Positions 7,707-46,058 of a DNA stretch of 64,000 nucleotides are shown here, piece after piece. The notes beneath the pieces were generated by a model. The model was given only the letters and a program-made list of their open reading frames with translations, had not been told where the DNA came from and did not search any database. Both the position numbers and the translations under genes were made by a program. Numbering within the stretch: position 1 is the first letter of the stretch; every line of letters starts with the position of its first letter. Where the stretch lies: the IMG/VR virus record IMGVR_UViG_3300032782_000001, positions 248,001 to 312,000 of that record; one strand, written 5' to 3'.

Positions 7707-7742
7707 CGTTCCTCCGCAGGATATTAAACCTGCGGAGGAACG
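7707..7742 (-). terminator. Perfect 14-bp stem-loop after tail tube gene; overlaps RBS of next gene
   Basis: cgttcctccgcagg-atattaaa-cctgcggaggaacg. No U-tract. On the minus strand the 3' arm contains GGAGGA 4 nt before the ATG at 7705. Confidence 0.6.
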
Positions 7743-7765
7743 CTACCATGCAACTGAATAGAAAA

Positions 7766-16888: not shown

Positions 16889-16933
16889 AGATATGAAATG
16901 TTACCAAAAGAGGGTCATTGTATTGTGCGCACC

Positions 16934-24276: not shown

Positions 24277-27200
24277 TTAAGCGCTGATGCGGATCTGAAG
24301 GGTGCTTACAACGTATTCCAGCGGGAACACCGGTACGTAGATCGAATTGGTCCGCATGATGGTCGGATCGCTGTCATCCACGGCTGCGGAGATACCCGAA
24401 ACCTTGGCGACAATCTGGCTATCGATCAAACGTCCGAACATTGCAGTCAACGCACGTTCCGTCGTCTTAATTAGGGTGCCCGTGAACTTCTGCCCGATGA
24501 ACGGATCAAGAGTCGTTCGGACGCTCTGTTGCACGAATTGAATCGTGAGGGTAACAGACGGCGTACGGGTAATGACCGTGTCAGTCCGGGTCGTCAAACC
24601 GTGGCGGACACGAAGTCCGGAGTCCACAAGCTCGATAACCGAGACTCCAGAGACCGCCACTTGATTGGCTTCCGTGGGGTCAAGAAGCCTTCCCGGGCGA
24701 ACAAACCCGAGAACAGGGCGTCGAGTCCAAGGAGAAGCCACGTCAATAGACGGAGTGCAAGTCGTCGCAGCCAGAGAAGCCGCAACGTAGGACCCGTCCA
24801 CGAGTTGGTTTGAGATGTTGCCGAGGCTATCTTGAACTCCGATGAGGTAGGAGTCTGGATAGACCACCACCATGAGTTCGCTGGCCAGTCCTTGCGCAAT
24901 AGCCTGAGCAGCCAACGGATTAGTACCCGCTGCCACTCCAACCACGCCCATCCGCTCTCCCTCTTGACGCGGAGAGCTCATCACAACGCAGTGCTGGTTC
25001 AGGTAGGCGAAAATCGCCGGATCCGTGCCCAGCGGCGTAATGATGTCAGGCTTGACATTGCCTTGAATTGGCTTGCGAAGCTCGTCGATCGCGGCCGTGA
25101 AAGATCCGACGGAGGCTTGAGAGGTCCCAGGGACCTTCAAAACCTGCTTCAAACCCACGAGGACAGCTCCATTGAGCAATGCGAGACGAGCTCCAAGCGA
25201 GAGGGGGAACTCCGGAGTAGGAGGCCCGAACGCTGCTTGAATCGATTTCGCATCCCGGTAGAGCGCCGCTGAAAGATCGGTCTTCGCGAAGTTGTACGAC
25301 ACGTAATAAATGTCGCCGATCTGAGGCTCGTTGCCGCTCCTACCAAAGGTCTGCACGATTCCAGTCGTATCAATACCCATGTTCAAGGTATTGAACACCG
25401 TAGTTTCGAGACCCGGGATGGAGCGGTATGGAATGGAAGCGTCGGCCGTGAAGGTAGAATTCACGATGAGCGTGAACGTTCCACCGTTCGCGTAATCTCC
25501 CGCGGACGCAGGGAGAACAGTGAACCTGAGGCCCGTGATAGCATCCGTATAGGTCTGACCGGGGAATCCGACGCCAAACGAACCATTAGGATTCGTCGAA
25601 GTAACCGTGTAACCTGCACGTGCAGCTTCACCAGCATCTCCGGAAGCACCAGGAACGATCCCGATACCCGTATCCGTTACGAAGATCGTGTTGGCGACCG
25701 ACGTGAAGGACAGAAGACTGCCCGTACCGGCGGTCCTTGAGTTAATCTCGAGGTACCCACCAATTCCCGCCGACGTAATGCGGTAAGCCACAGCCAAAGC
25801 ATTGAAGCTGCCGTTGGCGTTCAGAGCTCCCGCAATATCGGAGGCAAATGGCTGATGACGGAAAGTCGCATTTCCAGAGGTGAACCCGAGAATGGTGTTC
25901 GCGGAACCCTGGTTGATTCGAACAAGAGAAGTGACCGTATTGGTCCTTGAGACCATGACCACTTCACCAGCGTTGATGCCGAGGCCTTCCTGAGCCACAA
26001 GCTCCGCAAGAACCGACGTGACAATGTTCACAGTGTCGTTGACAACGTGAACGCCAGCTTGCGTCCTGTGCGAGTTATACTTGCTCTTGAGCTCCTCCGC
26101 CAAAATGAGTGCCGAGCGGAGGTCCGTCGCATCCGGCGCTGCTACAACGTTGACCGTATCGGTCATGGGGTGATATGCACCGCCAACGTTAGTCCGGTGG
26201 TTGTTGTAATCACCCTTCGCCTCGTTCAGAAGGGTGATGGAGCTTGCCAGATCCGTCGCATTGGGCGAAGTAATCCCGTTCGCAACGTCTGCCACCGTAT
26301 GGAAAACGGCTGATGCGATGTGCGTGTTATACTCGGACTTAATATTGTTGGCGAGTACGACCAGCGCTGCAGTTTGAGTTGCCTGATCTGCTGCTGGTGC
26401 GTTTGCCGAGTATCCGGCGTTGATGTACGCAACAACATCTTCGATGGAGACTGAAACGCCAGCCGGCAAAATGGCGACGTAATCAGTACCATCAATCGTG
26501 AATTGGAAGTTGTCGTTTACCGCCGCGGTGATAGCGAACGGTGCCGTCTTCGTTCCAACTTGGATCGCCGGCTGATTGATAGCGTTGTAAGAACCCGTCG
26601 ATTCTTGATTCGGAGTGAAACCCAGTGCCGGAGCGGCATCCGTCTGTCCAGGCGCCGTGGGAGAAAGAACCTTGACGTTAGACTTGAGTCCGTTAGTCGC
26701 CGAGAGTACGTTGCGTCCAACGACCTTAAGAATCGACTGAACGCCGTAGGTAACCACCGACGCGAGATTGTTCGGCGCCGTCGAAGCGAAAGTACCGGAA
26801 CCATCTGGATGCACTTGCACATCCGCATCGATCGCCGTGTTGATGTCCGTTGCAACCTGCGCAAGCGTGGTAGCTGCAGAAACATCAATCGGCGCAATGT
26901 TGACACCATCCACTTGGATCACAAGGTGATCCGTAGCTTGGAAGACCAACGCGCCGGGGTTACTGATGGGTTGCGAGAGAAGCTGCGCCACATAGGCCAG
27001 CGAAAGATCCACGGTGAATGCGGGGTTACCGTCAACCACCACACCACCGAAGTTTTTCGTGGCGAGATAGACGTCGTACGGCTCGGCCCCGGCATTCGAG
27101 AAAGAAGCGTGAGTGGCCGGCTCCAACGCATTGCTGAAAGCAATGGTGACCGTTTCAGATACGGGATTCCCACCGAAGTGGATGGCGTCAGTGACGTTCT

Positions 27201-28950
27201 CCACTCCCGACGGCCATTGAACCGTCTGAGGAAGCGCGCTCTTGGTCCCGAATCGGACCCCGTAGAGAGGCCCATTGTTGTTCACAGCTGAAGAGATCGT
27301 GAATTGACCAATCCCACTCGGACCAGGAGTAACTACCTTCAAAGTGAAGGTGTCGTCTCCCAATCGGTTATACCAGAACGTAGCAAACGCCAGGTAATCC
27401 GCAGGAACGGGGTCGCGAAGCGTGAAGGTATTCGTGGAGGAGTCCACTTCGAGCACAGTCACGGCGGGGCGAGAAACCGCGTCCCTAAAATTCTTGCCGA
27501 CGTAGACAGTGACAAGATCCGGACGATTGGTCGGAAGGTCGATACGACCGTTCGTGATCGTCTGATAAAGATCAATTCCGAGTGGCGTGTCACGACCGTT
27601 ACCGGTCGTGGGCGTCAAAGGCATGACGAACTTGGTCGTAGAAACGGTATCCGTTACCGTATCTGTGAACCTGTCACACTCCACACCGAAAATTCGATCA
27701 TCCACCAGCAGACCGACGATCTGAGTCCCATCGAAGCTGGATACTCCAGTCTTCACTCCAGCCGTCACCTGGAACGCAGTTCCCCATTGGATCATCGACT
27801 GGTCGGCATCGTTGACAACAACGAAATCCGGACCATTGAGATAATCGCGGCGCCCCGGAGCAATGCCAACATTGCCCATCGTGACGATGTTGTTGTTGGG
27901 CAGATAGTCGAAAGTATCTTGGAACGTGTTGAAGTAATACTGAATGGTGATCTTTGATCCGTCTTTCGGAGCGAAAGGAAGGGTAACGAGGCGATTGGCA
28001 CCATCCACGGACGTGGCGATCACTTGAAGGTTGTCGACCAGTACGACAACCTTAGAAGTGTCCGTCGTCGTGATACCTCCATCGGAACCATCAACGATAG
28101 GTCCATTGAAGACACGGAACGTCTTGTTGCGATTCGTGTAATCTCCAGGGTTGAACCCGAGAGCTCCATTCCCAGTTCCGGAACCAATAAGTACGTTGCC
28201 AGTAGCAACGAGCTGAACGTGATTCAAACCCTGAGCGTCTACGTGAACAGATGCCTGGAGTCCCGTGATCCCCGCGGCGTTCACATCGTTCGCGATGTCA
28301 GTCGCGGTGCGCGTACCCGCCGTCAGTTTGATAACACCTTGCAAGACATCGTTGACGGTCACATTGAGTTTGTCATTGACATTCAACGTGATGGTGTAAG
28401 TCTCCGCCTTCGGAGCAACGAGTACGGCTACACCTTTCGTGATCTGAGCCGAAAGATTATCCGTGATCCGCGTGTCTTTGCGGTGGAAATTGTAGCTGAC
28501 AAGGACAACATCGGTCGCTTGAGGCGGCACCAGAAGGCTTACGAGACCGTTGGTACCATCGACCGCAGACACGACAGCTTGATCACCGTTTACGGTGACC
28601 GAAACCTTAGTCGTATCGAAAGTCGTCTTGCCAATGCCCGAACCATCTACAATTGGGTAATTACGGACCCTGAATTGAGATCGGGTTCCGTCCTGTTGAC
28701 CCAAAGTAGGATTTTGGGGGGTCCCACTCAAGACCCACCGACCCGTAGCGTCTTCGTTGAAGATCGGCGTGTCAGCAACGCTGCTGGACCCGCGGATGAT
28801 CTCGAAGTCGGTCTGGGTGAGAGTCTCCTGCCCGGTACCAATCAGAACGGGGACCCTCAGTCCACCGAGGAGCTGTCCAAGGACGGGCTCGGTGATGGTC
28901 TGCGTGTAGACGCCGGGAGGCGCGTAGGTCGTGAACGGTCCGATGCCCAT
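24277..28950 (-). CDS. Contractile tail sheath protein with large internal insertions
   Basis: N-terminus FTTYAPPGVYTQT...VPVLIGTG; C-terminus LDPFIGQKF...AMFGRLIDSQIVAKVSGISA...YVPVFPLEYVVSTL, typical sheath ends; 1557 aa. Confidence 0.9.
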   Translation of the reverse strand: MGIGPFTTYAPPGVYTQTITEPVLGQLLGGLRVPVLIGTGQETLTQTDFEIIRGSSSVADTPIFNEDATGRWVLSGTPQNPTLGQQDGTRSQFRVRNYPIVDGSGIGKTTFDTTKVSVTVNGDQAVVSAVDGTNGLVSLLVPPQATDVVLVSYNFHRKDTRITDNLSAQITKGVAVLVAPKAETYTITLNVNDKLNVTVNDVLQGVIKLTAGTRTATDIANDVNAAGITGLQASVHVDAQGLNHVQLVATGNVLIGSGTGNGALGFNPGDYTNRNKTFRVFNGPIVDGSDGGITTTDTSKVVVLVDNLQVIATSVDGANRLVTLPFAPKDGSKITIQYYFNTFQDTFDYLPNNNIVTMGNVGIAPGRRDYLNGPDFVVVNDADQSMIQWGTAFQVTAGVKTGVSSFDGTQIVGLLVDDRIFGVECDRFTDTVTDTVSTTKFVMPLTPTTGNGRDTPLGIDLYQTITNGRIDLPTNRPDLVTVYVGKNFRDAVSRPAVTVLEVDSSTNTFTLRDPVPADYLAFATFWYNRLGDDTFTLKVVTPGPSGIGQFTISSAVNNNGPLYGVRFGTKSALPQTVQWPSGVENVTDAIHFGGNPVSETVTIAFSNALEPATHASFSNAGAEPYDVYLATKNFGGVVVDGNPAFTVDLSLAYVAQLLSQPISNPGALVFQATDHLVIQVDGVNIAPIDVSAATTLAQVATDINTAIDADVQVHPDGSGTFASTAPNNLASVVTYGVQSILKVVGRNVLSATNGLKSNVKVLSPTAPGQTDAAPALGFTPNQESTGSYNAINQPAIQVGTKTAPFAITAAVNDNFQFTIDGTDYVAILPAGVSVSIEDVVAYINAGYSANAPAADQATQTAALVVLANNIKSEYNTHIASAVFHTVADVANGITSPNATDLASSITLLNEAKGDYNNHRTNVGGAYHPMTDTVNVVAAPDATDLRSALILAEELKSKYNSHRTQAGVHVVNDTVNIVTSVLAELVAQEGLGINAGEVVMVSRTNTVTSLVRINQGSANTILGFTSGNATFRHQPFASDIAGALNANGSFNALAVAYRITSAGIGGYLEINSRTAGTGSLLSFTSVANTIFVTDTGIGIVPGASGDAGEAARAGYTVTSTNPNGSFGVGFPGQTYTDAITGLRFTVLPASAGDYANGGTFTLIVNSTFTADASIPYRSIPGLETTVFNTLNMGIDTTGIVQTFGRSGNEPQIGDIYYVSYNFAKTDLSAALYRDAKSIQAAFGPPTPEFPLSLGARLALLNGAVLVGLKQVLKVPGTSQASVGSFTAAIDELRKPIQGNVKPDIITPLGTDPAIFAYLNQHCVVMSSPRQEGERMGVVGVAAGTNPLAAQAIAQGLASELMVVVYPDSYLIGVQDSLGNISNQLVDGSYVAASLAATTCTPSIDVASPWTRRPVLGFVRPGRLLDPTEANQVAVSGVSVIELVDSGLRVRHGLTTRTDTVITRTPSVTLTIQFVQQSVRTTLDPFIGQKFTGTLIKTTERALTAMFGRLIDSQIVAKVSGISAAVDDSDPTIMRTNSIYVPVFPLEYVVSTLQIRISA

Positions 28951-29141
28951 CTTGACTCCTATGGTCCAAGCAGAAGTCTAAATATGTGTTTGCGACCCCT
29001 AGGGGTAGAATCCGCAGTCTCTGTATACGTATGAGTCTGAATTTTGGGCTCTGTCTGCTGGAAACCATAGGGAGCCTATGCGAGATGTAAAACTGGATCC
29101 CATTCTTTCTAGAATTGGGATTTAAAGAAAGGCGATAGAAA

Positions 29142-29507
29142 GTGAATACTTCCGAAACCAATCCGAACGATGGTGGCGCGTTGACCGAAGTTGACTACAA
29201 CACTTTCACCAAAGTTGACATGCGCGTCGGCACCGTGAAATCGGCAGTCAGAGTCCCTGATACCGACAAGCTCATTTGTATGCAAGTGAGCTTCGGTAGC
29301 TTTGATCGTCAAATTGTGGCTGGAATCGGCAAAGTTTTCACGCCAGAAAGTCTCTCTGGGCGTCAGTTCATCTTTGTCGTGAATTTGGCTCCTCGGAAAC
29401 TTCGAGGAGTGGAATCCCACGGGATGATGCTTGCTGCGAGTGACAAAGATAAACTCGCGCTTATTGTGCCAGACAGTAATGCTACGGACGGAGCCTCGGT
29501 AGGCTAG
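29142..29507 (+). CDS. Stand-alone tRNA-binding OB-fold protein (Trbp111/CsaA/MetRS C-terminal family)
   Basis: FTKVDMRVGTV, DKLICMQVSFG..RQIVAGI, VVNLAPRKLRGVESHGMMLAA. Confidence 0.9.
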   Translation: MNTSETNPNDGGALTEVDYNTFTKVDMRVGTVKSAVRVPDTDKLICMQVSFGSFDRQIVAGIGKVFTPESLSGRQFIFVVNLAPRKLRGVESHGMMLAASDKDKLALIVPDSNATDGASVG

Positions 29508-29935
29508 CGAGGACGCTTAGCCCAAGTCTTTAGGCCCGTTTCCCGGGCCTTCATGACTCCCGGATCCGCAGGACCCGTAGTTCCACCGGCAGTAGAAATC
29601 ACATTCGTGCCTGCCTTCTTGCGAATCTCATCACGGGCTTTCTTCCGTTTCCCATATTCGACCCATTTCTTCTCAGCAGATCGACCAATAGCTTTATCCA
29701 ACGTTGGATAATCAAGGTCATGAGAGCCAGACTGACCGTGAACCCCACTGCCTTGAGTCTGACCAGAAGGACCTTTGAAAGAAAAATTGGTAAGGGAGAT
29801 CTCTACTCGCTTGGCCATGGTCCGGCATTTTGGACATGGATGCTGCTTCGAAAATTGTTTGACATCATCCGGGTCCAAAAGAATCTCTTCAAAAAGAGAT
29901 TCACATGGCTCACAATGGTATTCAAACGTCGGCAT
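29504..29935 (-). CDS. FmdB-like zinc-ribbon protein
   Basis: MPTFEYHCEPCESLFE...CPKC. Start placed at ATG 29935. Confidence 0.75.
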   Translation of the reverse strand: MPTFEYHCEPCESLFEEILLDPDDVKQFSKQHPCPKCRTMAKRVEISLTNFSFKGPSGQTQGSGVHGQSGSHDLDYPTLDKAIGRSAEKKWVEYGKRKKARDEIRKKAGTNVISTAGGTTGPADPGVMKARETGLKTWAKRPR

Positions 29936-29964
29936 AGAAAACATTACCAGAATGTTGAAATCAA

Positions 29965-31173
29965 TTATCGAATACGGGCATACCCAATCTTGTTACCAAT
30001 AACTGTTGAAACTCCTGCCATATCCACAGGAGTCCCTGTCTTGAGAAGATCGGAGAGAACTGTTCCGTCCAAATACCCGGCTTGTTGCTCTTCCGTTTGA
30101 GAAGTCGTTTCGACTCGGAAAATTTCAATCGGAAGCGCGATGCGAGTTTCCCAATCCACACGCATAGATAGAGCTACGGAACTCTCGTAATAATATGCAT
30201 CCTCATCTTGATTGTAAACCTCTTCGTTTTCTCCGCCAGGAGAAATATCAAGGAGTTCAAGACCTTCAAATCCGAGTTTATTCTGCCTTTCAAGAATTTT
30301 CGCTATCATATAATCAGAAAGCTTCTCACGATCTTCAGAATCACGTGAGAAGACCACGAGTTCGAAATGAATTTCGAACTTTCCGCCAAAGATTTCGGCG
30401 ACCTCAGTGCGATCTGCAGTAATCGCGATGGCCATTTGATCGCCGTTTTGAGCTCTGTCGCCAAATGCTAAAACTACGCCTGGAATTGCAGTCTCGTTAG
30501 ATTCCTCGAGGAAGAATGGGAAGGGACCCTGTTCCCCCGTCTCATATCGATAATCTGCGTAAATAGTTAACCCAGTAGGAGGATTTTTGAGAAAAGTGAT
30601 GGCTCCCGTGGCGTCATCAACATGGTAGTCTACATTAACGAGGAGAGGATGAGTACCTTCTAGCCAGAGTCTTACAGAGCCAGGGTATATATTCTCTCGC
30701 GACAATTGAGACTCTATGTCACCGGGACCCGAAAACACAATCAGTGGTTCATCAGTCACGGTAAGGATCGGCCTTACCGTGAATTGACCCGGGACGCTCC
30801 GAGCTTCATTCGGGACTTGACATACTTTTATGATGTAAACGCCAGGAGGACTGGGAAAAATATCCCGCTTTTTGGAATACTGTTCTAAAAGAGCATAATT
30901 CTCTCGAATCCATTCCAAAGTAGTATTTGGGAAATTCTGAACAGGAGCCAGCATGCAAAAAGAACTATCCCGACCCATATAGTTGTCGGCTGACAGTCTT
31001 ACGCGATCACCAGATGTGGCATTAACGAAAATGCCACGTTGCGGGCGTGACTCGAATGAATATTTATTGTAGACGTTTTCGGAATCCCCGCGATAACGGG
31101 GATGCTCATAAAGGATTTTCCGGAGTTCCCGGATAATCCTCTTCTTCGTCGGATTCGTGATCCAGGTGATCAC
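29965..31173 (-). CDS. Tail completion/terminator-like structural protein
   Basis: 402 aa upstream of sheath; FELVVFSRDSEDREKLSDY pattern; carries an Ig-like insert. Confidence 0.45.
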   Translation of the reverse strand: MITWITNPTKKRIIRELRKILYEHPRYRGDSENVYNKYSFESRPQRGIFVNATSGDRVRLSADNYMGRDSSFCMLAPVQNFPNTTLEWIRENYALLEQYSKKRDIFPSPPGVYIIKVCQVPNEARSVPGQFTVRPILTVTDEPLIVFSGPGDIESQLSRENIYPGSVRLWLEGTHPLLVNVDYHVDDATGAITFLKNPPTGLTIYADYRYETGEQGPFPFFLEESNETAIPGVVLAFGDRAQNGDQMAIAITADRTEVAEIFGGKFEIHFELVVFSRDSEDREKLSDYMIAKILERQNKLGFEGLELLDISPGGENEEVYNQDEDAYYYESSVALSMRVDWETRIALPIEIFRVETTSQTEEQQAGYLDGTVLSDLLKTGTPVDMAGVSTVIGNKIGYARIR

Positions 31174-31207
31174 GGCCGGTCCTTCCAGTCACGGTTAGAC
31201 TCGAAAG

Positions 31208-31540
31208 TCACGAACCGCGACGACTACGACGGGACTTCTTGGGCTCCATTCCCACGTCAGTCGAGCTGGATGACTCGCCAGACTCCATAGACGGAGCATC
31301 ATCAGACGATGAATCATCAAGAGGAGCATCTCCTTCAGAAGGAGGATCCTCTACTTGAGGCTCTCCGTCAGGGACAACGGGCAAATCTTCCGGATCTGCA
31401 TACAACACCACATCCAATGAGTGCTGCGCGTTGTGGAGAACAACATCCTCCTCGGTCAGGACGATGTGAGGAACTTCGACTCCCTTATAGTTCGGCATTT
31501 GGCACCTACCGATCGGTGAATCGGAAAAAAGGTCGCTCAC
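31208..31540 (-). CDS. Small acidic hypothetical protein
   Basis: Asp/Glu/Ser-rich with a basic C-terminus; ATGA overlap with the actin-like gene. Confidence 0.5.
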   Translation of the reverse strand: MSDLFSDSPIGRCQMPNYKGVEVPHIVLTEEDVVLHNAQHSLDVVLYADPEDLPVVPDGEPQVEDPPSEGDAPLDDSSSDDAPSMESGESSSSTDVGMEPKKSRRSRRGS

Positions 31541-32586
31541 TCTTCAGACTGACTCAGTAGCAAAAGTCCAGTCGCGACGGCCGTCATAGGGTCTTTAGCG
31601 GCCCTGATTTCTGAAATTTGGATGGGAAACTTAGCACGATGAATTTCAAACCGTTCTTTGAACTTATCAAGAAATCCGGAAGCCAAAGAAGTTCCTCCAC
31701 TGACTACGAGAGGTACAGGCTTCGGGACCAGAAGCTCTTGACGAGCTTTTGAAAATTGTTGGATGATGGTATCAATGGAATAGTCAATGAGCGCTTGAAT
31801 AAATAACGCAATGGCTTCACCTTCAAGAGAACTCGATTTTTTACTAATGTCAATCCCACTTTCTTTAATGGAACAAATTTTGGCGGCTGTCGTACTGACA
31901 GCTTTGGCAGCTCCGGAGTCTACCCAATCTCCTCCGCGTCCTACGGAAAATTCCAGAGCGCTCATAGCATTGTAACTAAGACAAACGTTAGTCATGCCGG
32001 AGCCATACGAAATGCCGAGACCTGAAAAATTCTCTTTGGAACATTCCGAGAACACGATGGCCTGAGCCTCATTGGCAGGTTCAGCAGTAAATCCAAGTTC
32101 TGTCAAAATCTTCTTGAGAATAGCAGAGTGGTAAGTAACATCTGAACCTTGCACGTCAACAGCTGGAGCTGGCACTGAATAGACACATTTTTCACCGGAC
32201 TTACGAGGAGCACCCAAAATTCTCTTGATCATCAGAGCGATGACTTTTTGCGCATCCACCTCACCGGGGGTGATCACACCACCAGACATTGGACGACGAG
32301 CTTCTCGATTAAATAAATTCGCCGTCTCTAAGGCTTCATCCCCAATGATCAAAAGTTTCCCATCAAGCTCGACATGACTCGTGCCTGACAGTTTCAACAT
32401 TCGCATATTTCGGTTATCAAGAGGTAAATCGATGAAGGCATCCCTGATTCTAGTAGTTTTGACAGTCTTCCCATTTTGACGGGCAGACACAAAGTTCATA
32501 GTACCGGCATCAAGTGACGCTCCTGCGACAGCGGTATCATCGATGTCGTCAAGGTCAACACTAAACTTGGTCTCATTCTTCGCCAT
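31537..32586 (-). CDS. Actin-fold ATPase (MreB/ParM/FtsA-like superfamily)
   Basis: Phosphate-1 SLDAGTMNF, connect-1 ANEAQAIVF, phosphate-2 ISYGSGMTNV, adenosine VVSGGTSL, connect-2 DPMTAVATGL. Confidence 0.85.
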   Translation of the reverse strand: MAKNETKFSVDLDDIDDTAVAGASLDAGTMNFVSARQNGKTVKTTRIRDAFIDLPLDNRNMRMLKLSGTSHVELDGKLLIIGDEALETANLFNREARRPMSGGVITPGEVDAQKVIALMIKRILGAPRKSGEKCVYSVPAPAVDVQGSDVTYHSAILKKILTELGFTAEPANEAQAIVFSECSKENFSGLGISYGSGMTNVCLSYNAMSALEFSVGRGGDWVDSGAAKAVSTTAAKICSIKESGIDISKKSSSLEGEAIALFIQALIDYSIDTIIQQFSKARQELLVPKPVPLVVSGGTSLASGFLDKFKERFEIHRAKFPIQISEIRAAKDPMTAVATGLLLLSQSEE

Positions 32587-32631
32587 GGGAGTCTCCGTCT
32601 GGATACGCGGTATAGGATACCATACCCAATA

Positions 32632-33144
32632 TCACTTTTGCCGGAGACGACGCAGGACCTTTTTGCTCGAATCCATATCTGACTTATCTACTTCACTTTC
32701 TCGAACCTTCATACGAATTTCTTGAGTAGTTGGCATAATCCGGTCGGGGATGAACATGGGGTCCGATGAACCGGAATCGATGGACGCAGAATAATCTGGA
32801 GTCGTTACCTTGGGTTGGATATTCATATGGCGTAAAAGTAATAGGATTTCTTTCTGGGATTGATTGATTTCATCCAATCTTCGGGAGAATTCTGTATTCT
32901 CCACAGGATTCGAAGCAGATAGGGATTGGACTGGGGAATCTTTAATGAATGGCCAGATAGGCATCGGGCGGGATTCCGGAATGTTTTCCACTCGTACTAG
33001 TTTGACCATTTCTTTGAGATTTTTAGAAGCAGTTGCAGAATCAGCATTCACAACAGCTTGACTGCCTCGACCAGGAAGATGAACACCCAAATCTTCGATA
33101 CTCAGATCAATAGAAGTTAGATTGGTTAAACGACAAAGTTTCAT
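32632..33144 (-). CDS. Hypothetical protein
   Basis: 170 aa in operon; ATGA overlap. Confidence 0.6.
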   Translation of the reverse strand: MKLCRLTNLTSIDLSIEDLGVHLPGRGSQAVVNADSATASKNLKEMVKLVRVENIPESRPMPIWPFIKDSPVQSLSASNPVENTEFSRRLDEINQSQKEILLLLRHMNIQPKVTTPDYSASIDSGSSDPMFIPDRIMPTTQEIRMKVRESEVDKSDMDSSKKVLRRLRQK

Positions 33145-33794
33145 TTTACGTACCTAGCCATGACTTTTTCCAATTCCGGGGAGAACTTTTCTTGAATGGT
33201 GTAAGTAAGCTTGTCCATGAATTGTGCAATTAATCCTTGTAATTTCCCTTTCGGGTAATGAATCTCTGAAGTTCCTTCTCTAAGACTCTTCCGGAACATG
33301 ACAGAAAGTTTCCCTTCTCGGTTCACGTTCATGGACCTTGGCATGTGTTGAGCCATCTCATGACCGATAATTCTTTGTCCGGCCATACGACGTGCATCAC
33401 GTGTTGGACGACGGGCGTCACGCGTTGGAGTCCTCCTATCGAAAGCCTCTTTCCGAGCATCTCTGGGACCTATTAGCCTCTGGACCCCATTGATACCTAT
33501 CCCATAAGTTCGAGCGGCTTCAGAAACGGCCCCGGGTTTAGCCGATTCCACCATTTCTTGAACTTGTTTATCGCGCATCTCCAATGCTGAAAAATTGATC
33601 AAAAGTTCAAATGTGATTTCATTACCATCTACGTGGGCCAATAAATCGTAGTCCTTCAAATATTCAGACCTTCCGAATCCGGCGGCATCAATTATTCCTT
33701 TGAAGACATGTAGACCATCCTTTGCGATCTCATCCGAGAGACCGTCAGTTGCCCTTTGCAAAGCAACGTGAAACTGAGTTGTGAAGTCATCCAT
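33141..33794 (-). CDS. Hypothetical protein (possible neck/tail-completion)
   Basis: 217 aa; contains a short TRDARR repeat. Confidence 0.55.
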   Translation of the reverse strand: MDDFTTQFHVALQRATDGLSDEIAKDGLHVFKGIIDAAGFGRSEYLKDYDLLAHVDGNEITFELLINFSALEMRDKQVQEMVESAKPGAVSEAARTYGIGINGVQRLIGPRDARKEAFDRRTPTRDARRPTRDARRMAGQRIIGHEMAQHMPRSMNVNREGKLSVMFRKSLREGTSEIHYPKGKLQGLIAQFMDKLTYTIQEKFSPELEKVMARYVK

Positions 33795-34010
33795 TCAGCT
33801 CCCCATAACTTCATAGATGATTTCTTCTTCAGGAGATAACCACTGAAGACGTATATTCCAAAAAGGAACTGCCGGACGATTACCGCGTTTTCGTTTTTCT
33901 TTCCAACTGACGGGTACGCATTCTTGGACGACCCAAATCTGATCCCCTTGGATTCGAAAAACAGTCCCCGGTTCATGGTATCGGGTCGCGTCTCTCTGAA
34001 CCATGATCAT
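33795..34010 (-). CDS. Small protein with VMGS tag inserted among neck genes
   Basis: ATG 34010 lies 4 nt after the upstream stop; ends EEEIIYEVMGS*. Confidence 0.65.
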   Translation of the reverse strand: MIMVQRDATRYHEPGTVFRIQGDQIWVVQECVPVSWKEKRKRGNRPAVPFWNIRLQWLSPEEEIIYEVMGS

Positions 34011-34014
34011 GAAA

Positions 34015-35346
34015 TTAGGAACGTCTGTTTGCATTTTCGTAGGACACTGTAGTGCCTCGGATTTCACGTTCATCCGGAATCGAAGCAGCTTCAGTAACCA
34101 TCGGAGTAGCATTACCCTTGCCTGGAATTGTATATCGCGTCTGAGGGGCTACCAGTACAGAAGTATCAAGAACTGGAACTTGATATCGAATATCTGACTC
34201 ATCAAACTTGGACACATTGAAGAACTGTGCGAGTTGCATGCCACGGTTACTGGGCATCCGAACTGGTCCAACAGCATATCTGTCGCCGTTGAGTTTTACA
34301 ATGAAATCTCGCTGAGAAATAAGAGGGCTCGGTAAAGCCCAAACTTCATATGAATGTTCAACCGTACGACCACGAGCACTTTGAGCAATAGACTTAGCGG
34401 CATCATCTGGAGAGATATCGATGTCATACGGACCATCATACCCACCGATTATTCCTGTGCCATAACAAACAAGACAATCTGCACTAGGTTGTCGGTGCAG
34501 ACTGGAATAACATCCACACTTTGGTCCTGCGGCCCGGCGGATCATTAATTTGACTCTCTCGCCGCCTTGTTCCAACATCCAACGTTGGCGGCGAATAGCT
34601 TCACGCCAAATGTAATCGAGCTTCTCAATTTCAAAATTATTCGCTATGGCGGCATCTTCTAAACGTGTTTCGAGAAGCTGGCCACTATCCGCATCATAAG
34701 CTACGGTTGTGATACGATAGAAAATGCGTTGAGCAAGAGTAGTAGGAACTTGATTTGACAAGTACCTGTACGTAGCCAAAACGATGGAGTTAGGGTCTTT
34801 TGGTAAAACAGCATTCGTTTGAATTTGACTAGCTACATCAAACGTAGGCTCGCGACGAAGTTCCACTTCCCCTCTAGTCGCGTTTATGGATTCAACAAAC
34901 GCAGGAACCCCATCAACGGTTACTTGAACATTCAAATTTGTAATATTGGCAGATCCGGGAGAAGGATATATGACGATCGGATTATATCGAGTCCGAAACT
35001 CGTAACGTCCGTCTCCGTCTGAGCTAGGTCCACGAAAGAAAAAATTTTTAGAAACATCTTCCTGGAGAGCTAGGACAGTCCTCGTACTATCACGCCAATA
35101 AGCTGCGCCTACGGGGACAGTATTAAGACGCTCATATGGGCCGTACTCGGAGTCAAAACTCCTGTAAATATTGACCCCTAAAAGATCGAATCGAGAATTC
35201 GCTTGTAATTCTCCCGGCAGGGTCCAGCGAATGTCGAACGTCTCTTTTAGAAAACCTGAAGATACGAATATATTCAGTGGGGGTAGAGGTAAAGCAGGTG
35301 AATCCTGCTCCAGAATCCCAATTTTCCTGTCCGGCGGGAAAGGCAT
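34015..35346 (-). CDS. Head-closure/neck-like structural protein with FnIII/Ig-like N-terminus and Cys cluster
   Basis: 443 aa; CGC...CLVCYGTGIIGGY, then beta-rich DFIVKLNGDRYAV head-closure-like region. Positional inference. Confidence 0.5.
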   Translation of the reverse strand: MPFPPDRKIGILEQDSPALPLPPLNIFVSSGFLKETFDIRWTLPGELQANSRFDLLGVNIYRSFDSEYGPYERLNTVPVGAAYWRDSTRTVLALQEDVSKNFFFRGPSSDGDGRYEFRTRYNPIVIYPSPGSANITNLNVQVTVDGVPAFVESINATRGEVELRREPTFDVASQIQTNAVLPKDPNSIVLATYRYLSNQVPTTLAQRIFYRITTVAYDADSGQLLETRLEDAAIANNFEIEKLDYIWREAIRRQRWMLEQGGERVKLMIRRAAGPKCGCYSSLHRQPSADCLVCYGTGIIGGYDGPYDIDISPDDAAKSIAQSARGRTVEHSYEVWALPSPLISQRDFIVKLNGDRYAVGPVRMPSNRGMQLAQFFNVSKFDESDIRYQVPVLDTSVLVAPQTRYTIPGKGNATPMVTEAASIPDEREIRGTTVSYENANRRS

Positions 35347-35365
35347 ATCCTACCGGATTGTCTAA

Positions 35366-35677
35366 TTAAGAGCCGGTGGGAGGTTGAACAGGAACGTTAT
35401 GCTGAGCAGAAGGAACAGGTTTCAAAATCACAGTAATTTGCGAACCATCTGGTGAAATCATCAGTTTGCCTACAGTTTCCGGTTCTACCCCAGCATCTTT
35501 CAAGATTTTGGCGAACACGGCTTGCTGATGGACATACAAAGTTTGGAGTCCTGATTCTACTTCTCGGTAATGCAACAAGGCCTTACCAAGTGAAACGGAC
35601 TGATTGGCGATAGAAGCACCGGCTTGATTGAGCTCATCCCGGTTGCTTTGTGAAATTTCGAAGGTCTTGGTCTCCAT
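35366..35677 (-). CDS. Hypothetical protein
   Basis: 103 aa in operon. Confidence 0.55.
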   Translation of the reverse strand: METKTFEISQSNRDELNQAGASIANQSVSLGKALLHYREVESGLQTLYVHQQAVFAKILKDAGVEPETVGKLMISPDGSQITVILKPVPSAQHNVPVQPPTGS

Positions 35678-35686
35678 CGAGGAACT

Positions 35687-37036
35687 CTACCGACCTTTGC
35701 GCCGACGCGGAACTTCTTCAACTTCAGGTTCAAGTTCTTCTTCAGGAGAACCCATATCGTTGATGGCACATTCAATTTTGATGGGTTTTACGTGAACACC
35801 AGTAGGTTCTAGATGATATTCACGGGCCGTCACCGTCACACCAGTCTTAATGGCGGCCACAAGTTCCGTTCGAAGTTTCTTCAGAAGTTTCTGCTTCGGA
35901 ACCACGCCTTCGAAATCAGCCGTGAGGGATAGTTCCACTTGACACGAATATTCAGTGGAAGGGATGAGCATGTCCTCCGTCACAACAGGTTGTGAGGTGC
36001 GCGGGCGGGGTCGTTTGGGCGTAGGACGTTGTCGTTTCCGACGTGCAATACGAGCGGCCGCACGGCGAACGTCCAAGGAGGTTTGCTCCAATTCTTCTGC
36101 AGAATCCAATTGCATGGGTTGCAGGAACCCTGCAATTTCATCTCCCAATTCCCCACCTTTCATATCATTGAAAGATTGAAGAACAGCAACTTTGGAACCC
36201 GGCGGAACAATCACGTAGAGATTATTCGAGTCCCAGTCCACGCTTTTCGCGCCAGCCTGCATAAGTTCCAAGTCCACAGCGTCTTGAATGGAACCATCAT
36301 CTATAGCCAGCAGGTCATTTGTAGAACCAGATGACTGGAAAACTAAAACAAGGTCATCTTCCAACGATGCAATAAGAATACGTAGTTTGGTACTGAGAAG
36401 ATTCAGACTCGGCTTCTCGTAAGATTCAACGCTCGTTGCGATCTTCTTAAGAATTTCTGAAACACGAATAGGACTCGTAGAGCCAGCAATGGCTTTCCCT
36501 ACATTATCATAAGCTCCGTTTTGTAGAACGGGGTAATCGAATTCTACCTTTTTGACGGGAACGCCCATGACTAGATCAGGAACATGATGAGCAGTAGCTC
36601 CCTTCGGAACGTATGCTTTCACAAGAGGTGAGCCGTCAACATCGGATGACGGATCTGCCTGAATCCCTGGACATTGTTGCATCAAATCTCGAGCGGCCAT
36701 TAAAGCGACGTAATACTTACCTTTCTCTGAAGAATAAACGTGTTTCAAAAAATCCGAAGAAGGACGAATAGAATGAGTCTTGACATAATGGGAAAGACTG
36801 GAAGGCCAAACCCACGTGCCGTCCGTTAATTCTTGGTGGCTACCAATCCGCGAACCGCAGAGTCGACAAGAAACAAATTCACGATAAGTATTTCGGATTT
36901 CGCCCGAGTCTAAATAAGCCGAGACTGTACTCCGTTCGTTAAAGTTCCAGTCCAGATCCACGAGATCCAAAGGATCCGGAAGCTCCGGTTCCGAAGCAGA
37001 ATGCCAGAAACCTACTTTGAGCAGAGATGAGTCCAC
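35687..37036 (-). CDS. Multidomain hypothetical protein
   Basis: 449 aa; N-terminal CRLC..ELTDGTWVWP..LSHYV..H Zn-like domain followed by unrelated modules. Confidence 0.65.
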   Translation of the reverse strand: MDSSLLKVGFWHSASEPELPDPLDLVDLDWNFNERSTVSAYLDSGEIRNTYREFVSCRLCGSRIGSHQELTDGTWVWPSSLSHYVKTHSIRPSSDFLKHVYSSEKGKYYVALMAARDLMQQCPGIQADPSSDVDGSPLVKAYVPKGATAHHVPDLVMGVPVKKVEFDYPVLQNGAYDNVGKAIAGSTSPIRVSEILKKIATSVESYEKPSLNLLSTKLRILIASLEDDLVLVFQSSGSTNDLLAIDDGSIQDAVDLELMQAGAKSVDWDSNNLYVIVPPGSKVAVLQSFNDMKGGELGDEIAGFLQPMQLDSAEELEQTSLDVRRAAARIARRKRQRPTPKRPRPRTSQPVVTEDMLIPSTEYSCQVELSLTADFEGVVPKQKLLKKLRTELVAAIKTGVTVTAREYHLEPTGVHVKPIKIECAINDMGSPEEELEPEVEEVPRRRKGR

Positions 37037-37133
37037 ACCCGAGAAGCTTATAGAAGGCTCCGGGCTGTATAGTTAGAGGTTACCATGATCCCCATAGAGC
37101 GAAAATTTCGAAGAAGAGGAGGTATGGGGATCC

Positions 37134-40092: not shown

Positions 40093-40334
40093 AATTCCAC
40101 GAATGGAAAGACACTGGGATCAGAGCCACCGATTTGCGCTCCTTCGGACGGTCGAAAAAGAAAATGTCCCGGTACGAGTGCACGAAATGTGGACTCGTGA
40201 TGAACATTTCAGATGTCGATATTCAAATCGAAAAGAAAAACCCCGGGCATATCCACACCGTCGCTAAGGAAACAGTTCAGTCTGATTTCCAAGACTGTGA
40301 TCTCACAATCGTGGCTATGGTGATGAAGACTTAG
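40089..40334 (+). CDS. Small CxxC protein with divergent VMKT tag
   Basis: CTKC...DCDLTIVAMVMKT*; GTGA overlap with the ligase gene. Confidence 0.6.
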   Translation: MKFHEWKDTGIRATDLRSFGRSKKKMSRYECTKCGLVMNISDVDIQIEKKNPGHIHTVAKETVQSDFQDCDLTIVAMVMKT

Positions 40335-41824
40335 CCGTCGTCTTTCGCCAAAAGAGGCTTCAGCCCGGCTGCCTTTCGGAATTCATCTTCCACCCATTGA
40401 CGAGCTGAAACTATATCTTCAGATGAAAGGCGCTCATGTGACACCCAAGAACGATATTCACCTGGGGTACCTTTGTATAGAACAACATCTTTGGAAAAAT
40501 CCAATGATGCCTTGTCGAATTGAATGTTATGCTTTTCAGGGGATTCGAAAATAGGAGTACCTTCATACGGAGTCGTAATCGAAACATCCGCGTCATCAAG
40601 GCCCTCTTGAGCCATGAGGACAAGCCAATTTCTGAGTGCAGAAATAGTTTCAGGAGTCTCACCGGGAAGACCAACTTGAGTGAAGACTTTAGGGCGGATC
40701 CTGTACTTCACACAGAGACGGACAAACGCCGTGTTATCCTCAACTGTTGCACCTTTCCGAATATCGCGGAGAATCTTCGGATCCGCGGCTTCTGCGCCAG
40801 TACACATTTGAACGCATCCGGCTTCCGCCATAGACTTGAAGATAGAATCAGTTGTTAAGTTCTTCCCATTCTTGAAGAAAGCCCTCCAGAGAATTCCTTC
40901 TTCCTTTAACATTGGAAGGAATTTGCTCATGAAATCTGGCCTCAAGTTGATTTCATCATCGTAAAACATGAAAGCCCGCCATCCGTACATCTCACGGACA
41001 TGACGGATCTCTTCACGGACTTTCTCTGAAGATTTCGCTTCGAGTTTCCGATACCCATCCCAGTGTGAACAATAGGTGCACGCAAAAGGACAGCCGGTAG
41101 CGCTTACAATAGAAGTAGCCCGTTCTCCACCCACGAGATAATTGTAACTTTTGAGGTCAATAAGATCTCGAGCCGGGAGAGGCCATCTGTCATTCTGATA
41201 GACGACACCGTCATGCATTAAGTGTGAAGCTTCTTCCTTGGAAAGACGGCTGGGTAGTTTAATGATGCGTTCATTCTGTTCCCAACCAATTTCGCAATTA
41301 TCCTTGAGTATGCGCAACTGGTTGGTCTTTCTACTAAGCTCTGGTTTATTAGCGAGTCGCTCAGTAGAACGAGATATTCTGTTCAACAATTCGATGAAGC
41401 CAGGCTCCCCACCACCACCACCTTGATCCGAGACTACGACGTAGTCAAACGCGTCGTCGAGACACCTGGACGGTGCAGTGTTGGCATGAGGACCTCCAAT
41501 AGCAGTGATGCATTTAGGATTATGGGTCCGAATGAAAGCATTCAGTTTTACAACTTGAGGATGTTGCGCAGCAAGAGAATAGAACCCAACGAGATCCGCG
41601 TCTTGAGCCATTTCCCAAAGGTATTTTTCAGCTTCATCCATGACAGCGTCATAAGACGCGTGAACAATCTCAGGATGTCGTTGCTTATACCCAGTCAGGT
41701 CAGCTACTCGGATTTCATGACCGAGTTGCCTCGCCACTGCCCCGATTTGGAGTGGACCTAAGAAGGGAAAGGCCCTGTCATCAAGGAGAAAGGGGGAGGG
41801 AGGAATAACAAGACAAATCCGCAT
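40331..41824 (-). CDS. B12-binding radical SAM enzyme (class B methyltransferase-like)
   Basis: N-terminal cobalamin-binding-like region (FLGPLQIGAV...GGPHAN) and CxxxCxxC GCPFACTYC; FYDDEIN; GAEAAD..IL..IRKG. Confidence 0.85.
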   Translation of the reverse strand: MRICLVIPPSPFLLDDRAFPFLGPLQIGAVARQLGHEIRVADLTGYKQRHPEIVHASYDAVMDEAEKYLWEMAQDADLVGFYSLAAQHPQVVKLNAFIRTHNPKCITAIGGPHANTAPSRCLDDAFDYVVVSDQGGGGGEPGFIELLNRISRSTERLANKPELSRKTNQLRILKDNCEIGWEQNERIIKLPSRLSKEEASHLMHDGVVYQNDRWPLPARDLIDLKSYNYLVGGERATSIVSATGCPFACTYCSHWDGYRKLEAKSSEKVREEIRHVREMYGWRAFMFYDDEINLRPDFMSKFLPMLKEEGILWRAFFKNGKNLTTDSIFKSMAEAGCVQMCTGAEAADPKILRDIRKGATVEDNTAFVRLCVKYRIRPKVFTQVGLPGETPETISALRNWLVLMAQEGLDDADVSITTPYEGTPIFESPEKHNIQFDKASLDFSKDVVLYKGTPGEYRSWVSHERLSSEDIVSARQWVEDEFRKAAGLKPLLAKDDG

Positions 41825-41839
41825 TTGTCTTCCATCGAA

Positions 41840-45044: not shown

Positions 45045-45052
45045 GCCTAACG

Positions 45053-46057: not shown

Positions 46058-46058
46058 A

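What the first reader, a model, noticed from the sequence alone, without database searches (positions are those of the whole stretch)
31537..32586. Phage actin-fold ATPase embedded in the neck/tail-completion gene block
Seen: all five actin-superfamily motifs, but phosphate-2 has Ser where Asp is usual (ISYGSGMT). It is flanked by two small unknown genes (170 aa upstream; acidic 110 aa downstream with ATGA coupling) that could be an adaptor or nucleator. Established: some jumbo phages use tubulin (PhuZ) for intracellular organisation, whereas actin homologues in lytic phages are little characterised. Its position among late genes hints at a role in assembly or transport rather than DNA partition.
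Basis: partly seen in the sequence, partly recalled or inferred. Interest (0 to 1): 0.6.

Follow-up and report, generated by a model that had tools for sequence, protein, structure and literature searches.

The report
Volactin-type actin module in huge phages
A 436-kb phage encodes a strongly conserved actin-like filament protein of the volactin family, next to a small partner protein predicted to clamp onto it, among tail-completion genes; this looks like an undescribed actin counterpart of the tubulin cytoskeleton known from other giant phages.

Summary
The ORF is real (31537-32586, minus strand, 349 aa). It is a clear member of Pfam Volactin (PF25216, 237 bits, cut-off 35) in a complete 436-kb phage genome with terminal repeats.

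All five actin motifs are present. The Ser in phosphate-2 is invariant across phage, haloarchaeal and bacterial members, so it is a family hallmark, not a defect.

The confident model (pLDDT 89) is closest to filament-forming actins (MamK Z 28.8, BeeR, MreB, actin), not to Hsp70 or kinases.

The phage proteins form their own clade. Of 62 loci found through the neighbouring gene, 60 carry the actin in the same place: g443, g217, g170, actin, small gene, g402, Zn-ribbon, giant sheath-like protein. g402 has a tail-terminator fold, so the "tail-completion block" reading holds.

The upstream 170-aa protein is predicted to bind the actin through a conserved C-terminal motif (score 0.61, best control 0.05). 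A natural variant that lost the actin also lost exactly that motif.

The most likely function is a late-expressed dynamic filament plus adaptor that positions a cargo. Virion intermediates are favoured by context; phage DNA is the main rival. Nothing is experimentally tested. No paper describing it was found.

The parts
31537..32586 (-). Volactin-family actin-like ATPase (349 aa), the finding itself
   Evidence: PF25216 237 bits. Five motifs with invariant S193. AF2 model pLDDT 89.4. MamK Z 28.8, BeeR 27.2, MreB 26.1. The phage proteins form a clade with 95/96 support.
32632..33144 (-). g170: candidate actin adaptor. It has an N-terminal domain of about 55 aa, a Pro-rich linker, a helix, and a conserved C-terminal motif ([DE]P[ML]FIP...ALRKLRKK).
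   Evidence: It sits directly upstream of the actin in both phage groups. Complex prediction: ipSAE 0.61 against a best control of 0.05, with interface residues 132-168. L077 lacks the actin and keeps only the N-terminal domain (hhalign 97.3%, residues 1-68). No Pfam match; 24 word-search relatives, all unnamed.
31208..31498 (-). Small acidic protein downstream of the actin (96 aa from the ATG at 31498; the GTG-start ORF reaches 31540). It has an N-terminal motif [WFY][KR]G[VL]...T.EDV..H, a Pro/Ala/Glu-rich linker and a short basic tail.
   Evidence: Positional and motif homologues occur in group-A loci. Relatives end in a SAP domain: L012 30 bits (cut-off 26.3), L014 22.9, L010 17.3. It is absent in LR745208.1. 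It is retained in L052, which lacks the actin. Whether it belongs to the actin module is uncertain.
33141..33794 (-). g217: conserved unknown protein with basic DARR-type repeats. Its stop overlaps the g170 start (ATGA).
   Evidence: Synteny. Overlap. Tandem repeat at 33387-33429. No family hit.
34015..35346 (-). g443: conserved phage protein with a CxC...CxxC cluster, upstream boundary of the block
   Evidence: Conserved in both phage groups. Weak hits to phrog_2806 and phrog_1004 'virion structural protein'. Its Atlas neighbours are all viral.
29965..31173 (-). g402: tail-terminator / tail-completion-fold protein with an inserted beta domain (about residues 136-211)
   Evidence: AF2 model pLDDT 72. 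VIA matches: phage 812 neck Z 13.5, RcGTA 12.5, T5 p142 12.3, Mu terminator 11.2, pyocin collar 11.2, lambda gpU 10.8, T4 gp15 9.3. Foldseek top hit is the phage 812 neck.
29504..29944 (-). Zn-ribbon protein (146 aa), conserved member of the block
   Evidence: PF09723 26.5 bits, below its cut-off. Synteny.
24277..28950 (-). Giant (1557 aa) sheath-like protein, probably the tail sheath
   Evidence: N-terminal PGVY signature. Atlas feature neighbours are tail-sheath clusters at 0.87-0.94. The Pfam sheath models do not hit it, and another giant ORF elsewhere gets a weak sheath_1C hit, so the assignment is probable only.

Best explanation
The gene encodes a volactin-type actin: an ATP-binding protein that polymerises into dynamic cytoplasmic filaments in the infected cell. 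It works with the protein encoded just upstream (g170).

g170's conserved C-terminal segment lies along subdomain IA of the actin. One short strand adds onto the edge strand 41-47. The terminal helix sits in the groove between subdomains IA and IIA, the cleft used by ParR on ParM and by many regulators on eukaryotic actin. g170's N-terminal domain is then free to hold a cargo. Filament plus adaptor would make a cargo-positioning machine.

The pair has stayed on the same strand, tightly packed between virion genes and the tail-terminator gene, throughout a large clade of huge phages. I therefore infer late expression, and a cargo that is a virion assembly intermediate (filled heads, tails or the head-tail joining site). 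This would be analogous to capsid trafficking on PhuZ tubulin filaments in nucleus-forming jumbo phages.

Shown by computation: family membership, fold, conservation, synteny, the predicted interface, co-loss.
Inferred: polymerisation (from volactin), timing (from gene order), cargo (from context).

My sub-probabilities:
- filament-forming actin: about 0.85
- g170 binds it: about 0.6
- cargo is a virion intermediate: about 0.35
For: **Family and fold.**
- PF25216 at 237 bits.
- About 39% identity to haloarchaeal volactins, which share the S[YF]G[SA]GMTN motif.
- Volactin forms dynamic filaments in vivo (PMC10869688).
- AF2 model pLDDT 89.4. Closest structures are MamK filament Z 28.8, BeeR 27.2, MreB 26.1, crenactin 25.9, F-actin about 25.
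- Best PDB profile hit is MamK, E 8e-6.

**Selection.**
- All nucleotide-binding residues are invariant.
- It is among the best-conserved genes of the block: 64-80% identity in group A and 47-54% in group B, against 35-41% for g402.
- Relatives attract an intein and homing endonucleases.

**Partner.**
- Complex score 0.61 against a best control of 0.05. That mark was reached by 58 of 80 solved complexes and 2 of 110 mismatched pairs. Runs agree in at least 47% of contacts; partner pLDDT is at least 59.
- The interface is the motif conserved in both phage groups.
- L077 lost the actin and the motif but kept the N-terminal domain. L052 lost the actin and g170 together.
- Both losses are nested among actin-bearing phages.

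**Context.**
- g402 has a tail-terminator fold. There is a sheath-like giant protein and a tail fibre.
- 60 of 62 g402-anchored loci have the actin directly upstream.
- Genes are co-directional with gaps of 45 nt or less inside the module, and there is no excess of promoter or terminator sites.
- The genome has no tubulin/PhuZ.
Against:
- Polymerisation is inferred only from homology and fold.
- The complex result is a model's confidence with my own shallow alignments, and the co-loss evidence rests on two loci from fragmentary contigs (33% and 10% complete). The actin could sit elsewhere in those genomes.
- The two losses show the module is dispensable for making virions in some lineages.
- No function is known for g170's N-terminal domain, g217 or g443, so the cargo is a guess.
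- Hints towards DNA instead: the downstream small protein carries a SAP DNA-binding domain in several relatives. An Atlas cluster fuses Volactin to HU. The known phage and plasmid actins AlpC and ParM, and archaeal salactin, handle DNA.
- The sheath assignment is only probable.
Confidence: 0.5

Rival explanations
1. DNA positioning or partition. The filament moves or anchors phage DNA (replicating genomes, or DNA destined for packaging), as in ParMRC, AlpC/AlpA or salactin. The SAP-domain small protein, or g170, would act as the DNA-binding adaptor.
For: - The small downstream protein ends in a SAP domain in L012 (30 bits, cut-off 26.3), L014 and L010.
- An Atlas cluster of Acidobacteriota proteins fuses Volactin with HU-type PF00216 in 96% of members.
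- Precedents: prophage CGP3 AlpC/AlpA (PMC4446434) and salactin (cited in PMC10869688).
- In ParMRC, AlfAB and Alp7AR the adaptor gene lies next to the actin gene (my own knowledge).
Against: - No iteron or centromere-like repeat array lies within about 4 kb.
- The window's own small protein has no SAP domain.
- The small gene is missing in the distant phage group and persists where the actin is lost (L052).
- The gene sits in a tail-completion block, not a replication block.
- g170, the better-supported partner, has no recognisable DNA-binding domain.
Confidence: 0.22
2. Host-cell remodelling. The phage filament changes host shape, size or division to make room for very large virions, by analogy with volactin's role in cell shape or with MreB.
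For: Volactin is needed for the timely rod-to-disk transition in H. volcanii and spans the cytoplasm with its tips at the membrane (PMC10869688). MreB is among the closest folds. Huge virions plausibly need a reorganised cytoplasm (inference).
Against: - A phage-specific partner with a cargo-like domain fits transport better than morphogenesis.
- The disordered acidic N-terminus and the C-terminus show no obvious amphipathic membrane-targeting helix (sequence).
- The position among late structural genes is odd for host takeover.
Confidence: 0.12
3. Non-polymerising ATPase. It acts as an Hsp70-like assembly chaperone or clamp for neck or tail proteins, or is a virion-packaged protein delivered with the DNA.
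For: It is located between virion genes. The usual phosphate-2 Asp is replaced by Ser. In the viral structure library, Hsp70 homologues top the list, though with low TM scores.
Against: - The 50 best solved matches are all filament-forming actins, with none from Hsp70 or kinases.
- The same Ser is present in volactin, which polymerises dynamically.
- There is no substrate-binding or lid domain: 349 aa is the actin core only.
Confidence: 0.08

Closest known systems
Volactin (VolA, HVO_2015) of Haloferax volcanii; Pfam PF25216
   Same: Same Pfam family, scoring well above its cut-off. About 39% identity to haloarchaeal members. Same five motifs, including the phosphate-2 Ser. Same length and core-only architecture.
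   Different: The phage proteins form their own supported clade. They are encoded in huge-phage tail-completion blocks with a phage-specific partner (g170) that the haloarchaeal loci lack. Volactin's known role, the transition to the disk cell shape, has no obvious equivalent for a phage.
MamK (with MamJ) of magnetotactic bacteria
   Same: Closest solved structure by profile (E 8e-6) and by fold (Z 28.8, rmsd 3.0 A over 296 residues). MamK is a filament that positions a cargo through an acidic adaptor (my own knowledge).
   Different: Only about 20% identity. MamK has Asp in phosphate-2 and falls outside the volactin family on a very long branch. No magnetosome genes are present.
AlpC/AlpA of Corynebacterium glutamicum prophage CGP3
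   Same: A phage-encoded actin with a co-transcribed adaptor that binds the filament (PMC4446434).
   Different: AlpA binds phage DNA, and alpAC are early genes needed for replication. Here the genes lie among tail genes, no DNA site was found, and the partner has no recognisable DNA-binding domain. Sequence relatedness to AlpC was not tested, because no AlpC sequence was at hand.
ParM/ParR/parC plasmid segregation (also AlfA/AlfB, Alp7A/Alp7R)
   Same: A dynamic actin plus a small neighbouring adaptor. The adaptor's terminal peptide binds the cleft between subdomains IA and IIA, as the predicted g170 interface does (the ParR-ParM mode is from my own knowledge).
   Different: No centromere repeats. 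The adaptor gene is upstream, not downstream. ParM is not among the closest folds listed. The context is lytic-type virion genes.
PhuZ tubulin spindle of nucleus-forming jumbo phages
   Same: A functional analogue: a phage-encoded dynamic cytoskeleton that is non-essential but conserved, and that positions and delivers capsids (PMC13282480; titles).
   Different: A different superfamily (tubulin, not actin). This genome has no tubulin. PhuZ is not embedded in the tail module.

Membership tests
Volactin family (Pfam PF25216) | Scores above the curated gathering threshold over the full-length model | tested here: met
   237.2 bits against a cut-off of 35; residues 24-342 cover profile positions 4-318 of 321. 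The whole-genome scan gave the same result.
Volactin family (Pfam PF25216) | Actin-fold nucleotide-binding motifs, with the family's phosphate-2 signature S-[YF]-G-[SA]-G-[ML]-T-N (signature derived here) | tested here: met
   S193, G195, G197 and N200 are invariant in 31 phage, haloarchaeal and Magnetococcales sequences. MreB and MamK-like proteins have Asp at that position.
Volactin family (Pfam PF25216) | Groups with haloarchaeal volactins rather than with MreB or MamK in a tree | tested here: met
   The volactin-family sequences separate from the MreB/MamK-like outgroup at 100/100. The phage clade has 95/96 support. Only two outgroup sequences were used, and the branch is long.
Volactin family (Pfam PF25216) | Forms dynamic filaments in vivo | not testable with these tools
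   This is known only for H. volcanii VolA (PMC10869688). Here it is inferred from 39% identity and the fold.
Filament-forming actin-like proteins (as opposed to Hsp70 or sugar-kinase members of the superfamily) | Four-subdomain actin core closest in structure to polymerising actins | tested here: met
   The top 50 solved matches are MamK, BeeR, MreB, crenactin and F-actin at Z 24.5-28.8. Foldseek agrees.
ParMRC-type segregation system | Centromere-like repeat array next to the operon | tested here: not met
   No direct-repeat family or tandem array lies in 29000-37100, apart from a coding repeat inside g217.
ParMRC-type segregation system | Adjacent small adaptor that binds both the filament and DNA | tested here: inconclusive
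   g170 is predicted to bind the actin but has no DNA-binding domain. The downstream small protein has a SAP domain only in some relatives, and its binding to the actin was not tested.
MreB (PF06723) | Matches the MreB_Mbl model | tested here: not met
   No match in the genome at E <= 0.01. The PDB profile E-value to MreB is 0.15.
Tail terminator / tail-completion proteins (for neighbour g402) | gpU / gp15 / p142-type fold | tested here: met
   More than 30 concordant neck, terminator and collar entries at Z 9-13.5, spanning model residues about 4-349. The model has pLDDT 72 and pTM 0.49, so confidence is moderate.

The most novel reading that the evidence does not exclude
A large, globally distributed clade of huge phages builds its own actin cytoskeleton late in infection. 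It uses a dedicated adaptor (g170) to haul or dock virion assembly intermediates, for example filled heads to tails at the tail-terminator end. That would be the first actin-based intracellular transport system for virus assembly in prokaryotes, and an actin counterpart of the PhuZ tubulin spindle.
Probability: 0.3. Interest if true: 0.85.

Novelty: new variant of a known kind. Interest (0 to 1): 0.62.

Why it matters
Phage-built cytoskeletons are so far known almost only from PhuZ tubulin in nucleus-forming jumbo phages. Phage actins are known from one prophage system that handles DNA.

Here an actin of the recently named volactin family is fixed in the tail-completion block of a very widespread lineage:
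- more than 1,000 protein clusters;
- 357 viral stretches found through the neighbouring gene;
- genomes up to about 440 kb.

It comes with a predicted dedicated binding partner. If it polymerises and carries virion parts, it would show that very large phages solve the logistics of assembling huge particles with an actin track.

It would also give a compact actin-plus-adaptor pair that can be studied in vitro, and a new handle on volactin biology: the conserved Ser in phosphate-2 and the adaptor-binding cleft.

The two natural deletion variants offer ready-made comparisons.

Tried and rejected
- **Family and structure searches that gave nothing.** PHROGs gave no hit for the actin or its small neighbours. 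Single-sequence PDB search found nothing meaningful.
- **HK97 gp10 idea for g217.** I suspected an HK97 gp10-like tail-completion protein from a short motif in distant relatives. Neither Pfam nor PHROGs supports it, and the alignment between the phage groups is weak, so I dropped the idea and folded g402 instead.
- **Sheath identity.** The Pfam sheath models do not hit the 1557-aa protein. Its sheath identity rests on language-model neighbours and an N-terminal signature only.
- **Other cytoskeletal genes.** Tubulin and MreB models find nothing in the genome.
- **Operon signals.** Promoter and terminator scans are at chance level.
- **Centromere repeats.** None found.
- **Expression data.** I did not try to obtain it another way, and read laying was not used.
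- **g443 and g170 searches.** The Atlas search returned only viral hypothetical clusters for g443. The g170 word search returned 24 unnamed proteins with no domains.
- **Big representative search.** Not used, because the family scan had settled the identity.
- **Downstream protein and actin self-association.** Neither could be tested, because the single complex job went to g170.
- **Operator rules.** No alternative genetic code was used.
Full report

Yes. The ORF listing gives an ATG-initiated ORF at 31537..32586 on the minus strand, 349 aa. It matches Pfam PF25216 (Volactin) at E 4e-70, 237 bits against a gathering score of 35, nearly end to end.

The window is positions 248001-312000 of a 436,316-bp IMG/VR virus record with direct terminal repeats, estimated complete. 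So this is a huge phage.

Alignments of 17 and 31 relatives show all five actin-superfamily motifs:
- phosphate-1 LDAGTMN
- connect-1 NEA
- phosphate-2 GISYGSGMTN
- adenosine SGGTS
- connect-2 DPMTAVATG

D26, G28, T29, N31, N172, E173, S193, G195, G197, N200, G297 and G298 are invariant.

The Ser-for-Asp replacement in phosphate-2 is real. MreB and a MamK-like protein taken from a Magnetococcales genome read VVDIGGGTT and IIDIGAGTT at that position. But the Ser is invariant in phage, haloarchaeal and bacterial members alike, so it marks the family rather than this gene.

Two details need correcting:
- The overlap at the actin's 3' end is GTGA, not ATGA. Orthologues of the downstream gene all begin M-x-[WFY]-[KR]-G. 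The likely start is therefore the ATG at 31498, preceded by AGGTG.
- A genuine ATGA overlap joins g217 and g170, one gene upstream.

**2. What the protein is**

The AlphaFold2 model built on 31 sequences is confident (pLDDT 89.4, pTM 0.86). Only the first 16 residues are disordered.

The best solved matches are all polymerising actins (Foldseek agrees):

| Match | Z |
|---|---|
| MamK filament subunit | 28.8 (rmsd 3.0 A, 296 residues) |
| BeeR | 27.2 |
| MreB | 26.1 |
| crenactin | 25.9 |
| F-actin | about 25 |

A family profile finds MamK as the best PDB sequence match (E 8e-6) and MreB only marginally. The MreB Pfam model does not detect the gene, and the genome has no tubulin. The viral structure library holds no close relative.

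The founding member of the family, H. volcanii volactin, forms dynamic filaments in vivo that grow, shrink rapidly and span the cytoplasm (PMC10869688). It is not met.

**3. Relatives and phylogeny**

The word search returned 1,058 proteins. The top 120 are 62-80% identical, all carry PF25216, and many sit on contigs of 200-440 kb.

Among deposited phage genomes only two uncultured huge phages match: LR745208.1 (485 kb, 50%) and LR756511.1 (595 kb, 31%).

Cellular relatives:
- Haloarchaeal volactins, about 39% identical.
- A Pseudomonadota subfamily (Magnetococcales and others), about 37% identical.
- PF25216 was found in 61 of 301 sampled genomes of the haloarchaeal phylum and in 21 of 401 sampled Pseudomonadota.

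In a maximum-likelihood tree rooted on MreB and the MamK-like protein:
- the phage proteins of two groups (A, 64-80% identical to the query; B, 47-54%) form one clade (95/96);
- that clade is separate from the haloarchaeal (99/96) and Magnetococcales (100/100) clades;
- the LR756511.1 protein sits on a long, unreliable branch.

Several "MAG" hits labelled Methylobacter, Actinomycetota, Legionellales, Thermoplasmata and Lysinibacter carry the phage gene order. I take them for mis-binned phage contigs, so they say nothing reliable about the host.

**4. Gene neighbourhood**

Across 13 viral loci found through the actin, the order on one strand is: g299, C-terminal part of g449, (g103), g443, g217, g170, actin, a small gene, g402, Zn-ribbon protein, giant 1557-aa protein. 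Group B keeps g443, two small ORFs, actin, g402, Zn-ribbon and the giant protein.

To avoid circularity I searched viral contigs with the g402 profile. 357 stretches matched. Of the 62 retrieved loci with at least 2.5 kb upstream, 60 carry the actin directly upstream.

g402 folds (pLDDT 72) into a tail-terminator / tail-completion fold with an inserted beta domain. Matches include phage 812 neck Z 13.5, RcGTA 12.5, T5 p142 12.3, Mu terminator 11.2, pyocin collar 11.2, lambda gpU 10.8 and T4 gp15 9.3.

The 1557-aa protein starts with a PGVY-type sheath signature, and its language-model neighbours are tail-sheath clusters (0.87-0.94). The Pfam sheath models miss it, and another giant ORF outside the window gets a weak sheath_1C hit. 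"Sheath" is therefore probable, not shown.

A 2424-aa collagen-like tail fibre lies in the same window.

Within the module the intergenic gaps are 45 nt or less. Promoter-like and terminator-like sites are no more frequent than in shuffled sequence. The "neck/tail-completion block" description is supported.

**5. The flanking small genes**

*Upstream, g170.* It has an N-terminal domain of about 55 aa, a Pro-rich linker, a helix, and a C-terminal motif ([DE]P[ML]FIP...acidic...ALRKLRKK). The motif is conserved in both phage groups although overall identity is only 16-39%.

The one controlled complex prediction (actin with g170, each with its alignment) passed:
- Median score 0.61; best control 0.05.
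- That mark was reached by 58 of 80 solved complexes and 2 of 110 mismatched pairs.
- Runs agree in at least 47% of contacts; partner pLDDT is at least 59.
- These counts hold only roughly, because my own alignments were used.

The interface is g170 residues 132-168. On the actin it covers strand 40-47, residues 70-84, helices 110-123 and 155-164, the hinge 179-187 and the C-terminal helix 332-348. By the canonical actin topology (my inference from the model's secondary structure) this wraps subdomain IA and enters the IA/IIA cleft.

Nature provides a check:
- L077 lacks the actin. It retains a protein whose first 68 residues match the g170 N-terminal domain (hhalign 97.3%, E 2e-11), but whose C-terminus is an unrelated acidic, Ala-rich tail.
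- L052 lacks the actin and g170 together.
- In a g402 tree both are nested among actin-bearing phages. L052 falls in a 100* clade with L041 and L059; L077 pairs with L072 at 93. So these are two independent losses.
- The contigs are fragments (33% and 10% complete), so relocation of the actin cannot be excluded.

*Downstream small gene.* It is conserved in group A as an N-terminal motif plus a low-complexity linker. It ends either in an acidic/basic tail, as here, or in a SAP domain: L012 30 bits (above its cut-off), L014 22.9, L010 17.3. It is absent in LR745208.1 and persists in L052 without the actin. Its link to the actin is therefore open.

**6. Mechanism and rivals**

My best reading is a late-expressed, dynamic volactin-type filament with g170 as adaptor. 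The C-terminal peptide holds the filament subunit and the N-terminal domain holds the cargo. Gene context favours a virion assembly intermediate as the cargo, by analogy with capsid trafficking on PhuZ filaments.

The main rival is DNA handling. Its support: the SAP domains, an Atlas cluster of Acidobacteriota proteins that fuse Volactin to an HU-type domain, and the precedents ParMRC, AlpC/AlpA and salactin. Against it: no centromere-like repeats nearby, the tail-gene context, and the lack of a DNA-binding domain in g170.

Host-shape remodelling and a non-polymerising chaperone role are less likely, for the reasons given under the rivals.

The two natural losses show that the module is accessory, as PhuZ is.

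**7. Comparison with what is known, and novelty**

The protein is a member of the Volactin family, and every testable criterion is met. In layout it works most like the actin-plus-adaptor systems ParM/ParR, AlpC/AlpA and MamK/MamJ, but it fails the ParMRC centromere criterion.

I found no description of volactin-family actins in phages:
- The 17 papers that mention volactin concern archaea or cite it in passing.
- The 2020 huge-phage survey mentions only tubulin.
- A 2026 jumbo-phage review discusses only PhuZ.
- Other searches gave nothing relevant.

Databases already tag these proteins with PF25216 or as "actin-like ATPase", so their existence is not hidden. What is new here is the phage clade, its fixed place in the tail-completion block, the candidate adaptor and the co-loss pattern. 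I rate it a new variant of a known kind, interest 0.62.

**8. Limits**

Everything is computational. Expression could not be examined. The host is unknown. Cellular relatives were sampled through patterns and subsamples, so the family's range is not fully mapped.

Noticed in passing
L014:6-1961 (relative of the actin gene): The actin gene of this relative is interrupted in frame by an intein of about 330 aa (Cys...His-Asn|Cys). Pfam gives LAGLIDADG_3 34.9 bits and Intein_splicing 26.4 bits. It is inserted just after the phosphate-2 strands, between the residues equivalent to about 216 and 217 of the window protein.
   Followed up: partly
L014:1960-1965: The same relative has an in-frame TAG where all others have Lys. 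This could be a sequencing error, a pseudogene or recoding. It is a single case and was not pursued.
   Followed up: no
L011:1690-2451, L014:2084-2863, L012:7515-8255: GIY-YIG (plus NUMOD3) homing-endonuclease ORFs, and a Cys-rich HNH-like ORF, are inserted between the actin and g402 in some relatives. The locus is a hot spot for selfish elements.
   Followed up: partly
window 55504-62778 (-), also 53764-55500 (-): A 2424-aa collagen-like tail-fibre protein (very high PHROG tail-fibre scores from its repeats) lies in a 62% GC island, against about 47% GC elsewhere. It is followed by a 578-aa collagen-like protein.
   Followed up: partly
window 40331-50988 (-): A glycan-synthesis cluster: a B12-binding radical SAM enzyme, two GT1 glycosyltransferases, two NAD-dependent epimerases/dehydratases and a 1122-aa GT2-TPR-methyltransferase-GT1 fusion. 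It lies between the tail-fibre genes and the actin block and could glycosylate virion proteins.
   Followed up: no
window 29142-29507 (+): A 121-aa tRNA-binding-domain protein (PF01588, 88.5 bits) is encoded on the opposite strand, between the Zn-ribbon gene and the giant sheath-like gene.
   Followed up: no
G000:C1:215869-216051 (outside the window; L037): A second giant open frame (about 2170 aa) gives a weak Phage_sheath_1C match (14.9 bits). This leaves open which giant protein is the true sheath.
   Followed up: no
L016 (LR756511.1:541792-556787), ORF 6989-8005: A 595-kb uncultured phage carries a much more divergent volactin-like gene (31% identity, same phosphate-2 Ser) in an unrelated neighbourhood. 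This may be an independent acquisition.
   Followed up: partly
L026, L027, L115-L118 (Pseudomonadota genomes): A bacterial volactin subfamily, about 37% identical and with the same Ser, was found in 21 of 401 sampled Pseudomonadota genomes, some on contigs longer than 500 kb. As far as I could find it is uncharacterised.
   Followed up: partly
ESM Atlas cluster, no coordinates: A cluster of 69 Acidobacteriota proteins (456 aa) combines the Volactin domain with an HU-type DNA-binding domain (PF00216 in 96% of members). This fusion hints at a DNA-linked role for some family members.
   Followed up: no
window 33387-33429 (within g217): A 21-nt tandem repeat encodes basic DARR-type repeats. Orthologues have variable numbers of similar repeats.
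   Followed up: no
window 11693-12526 (-), 13100-14605 (-), 15072-16685 (+), 16898-17833 (+): Other annotated genes in the window: an HNH endonuclease, an AAA ATPase, a collagen-repeat protein and an inosine-uridine nucleoside hydrolase homologue.
   Followed up: no
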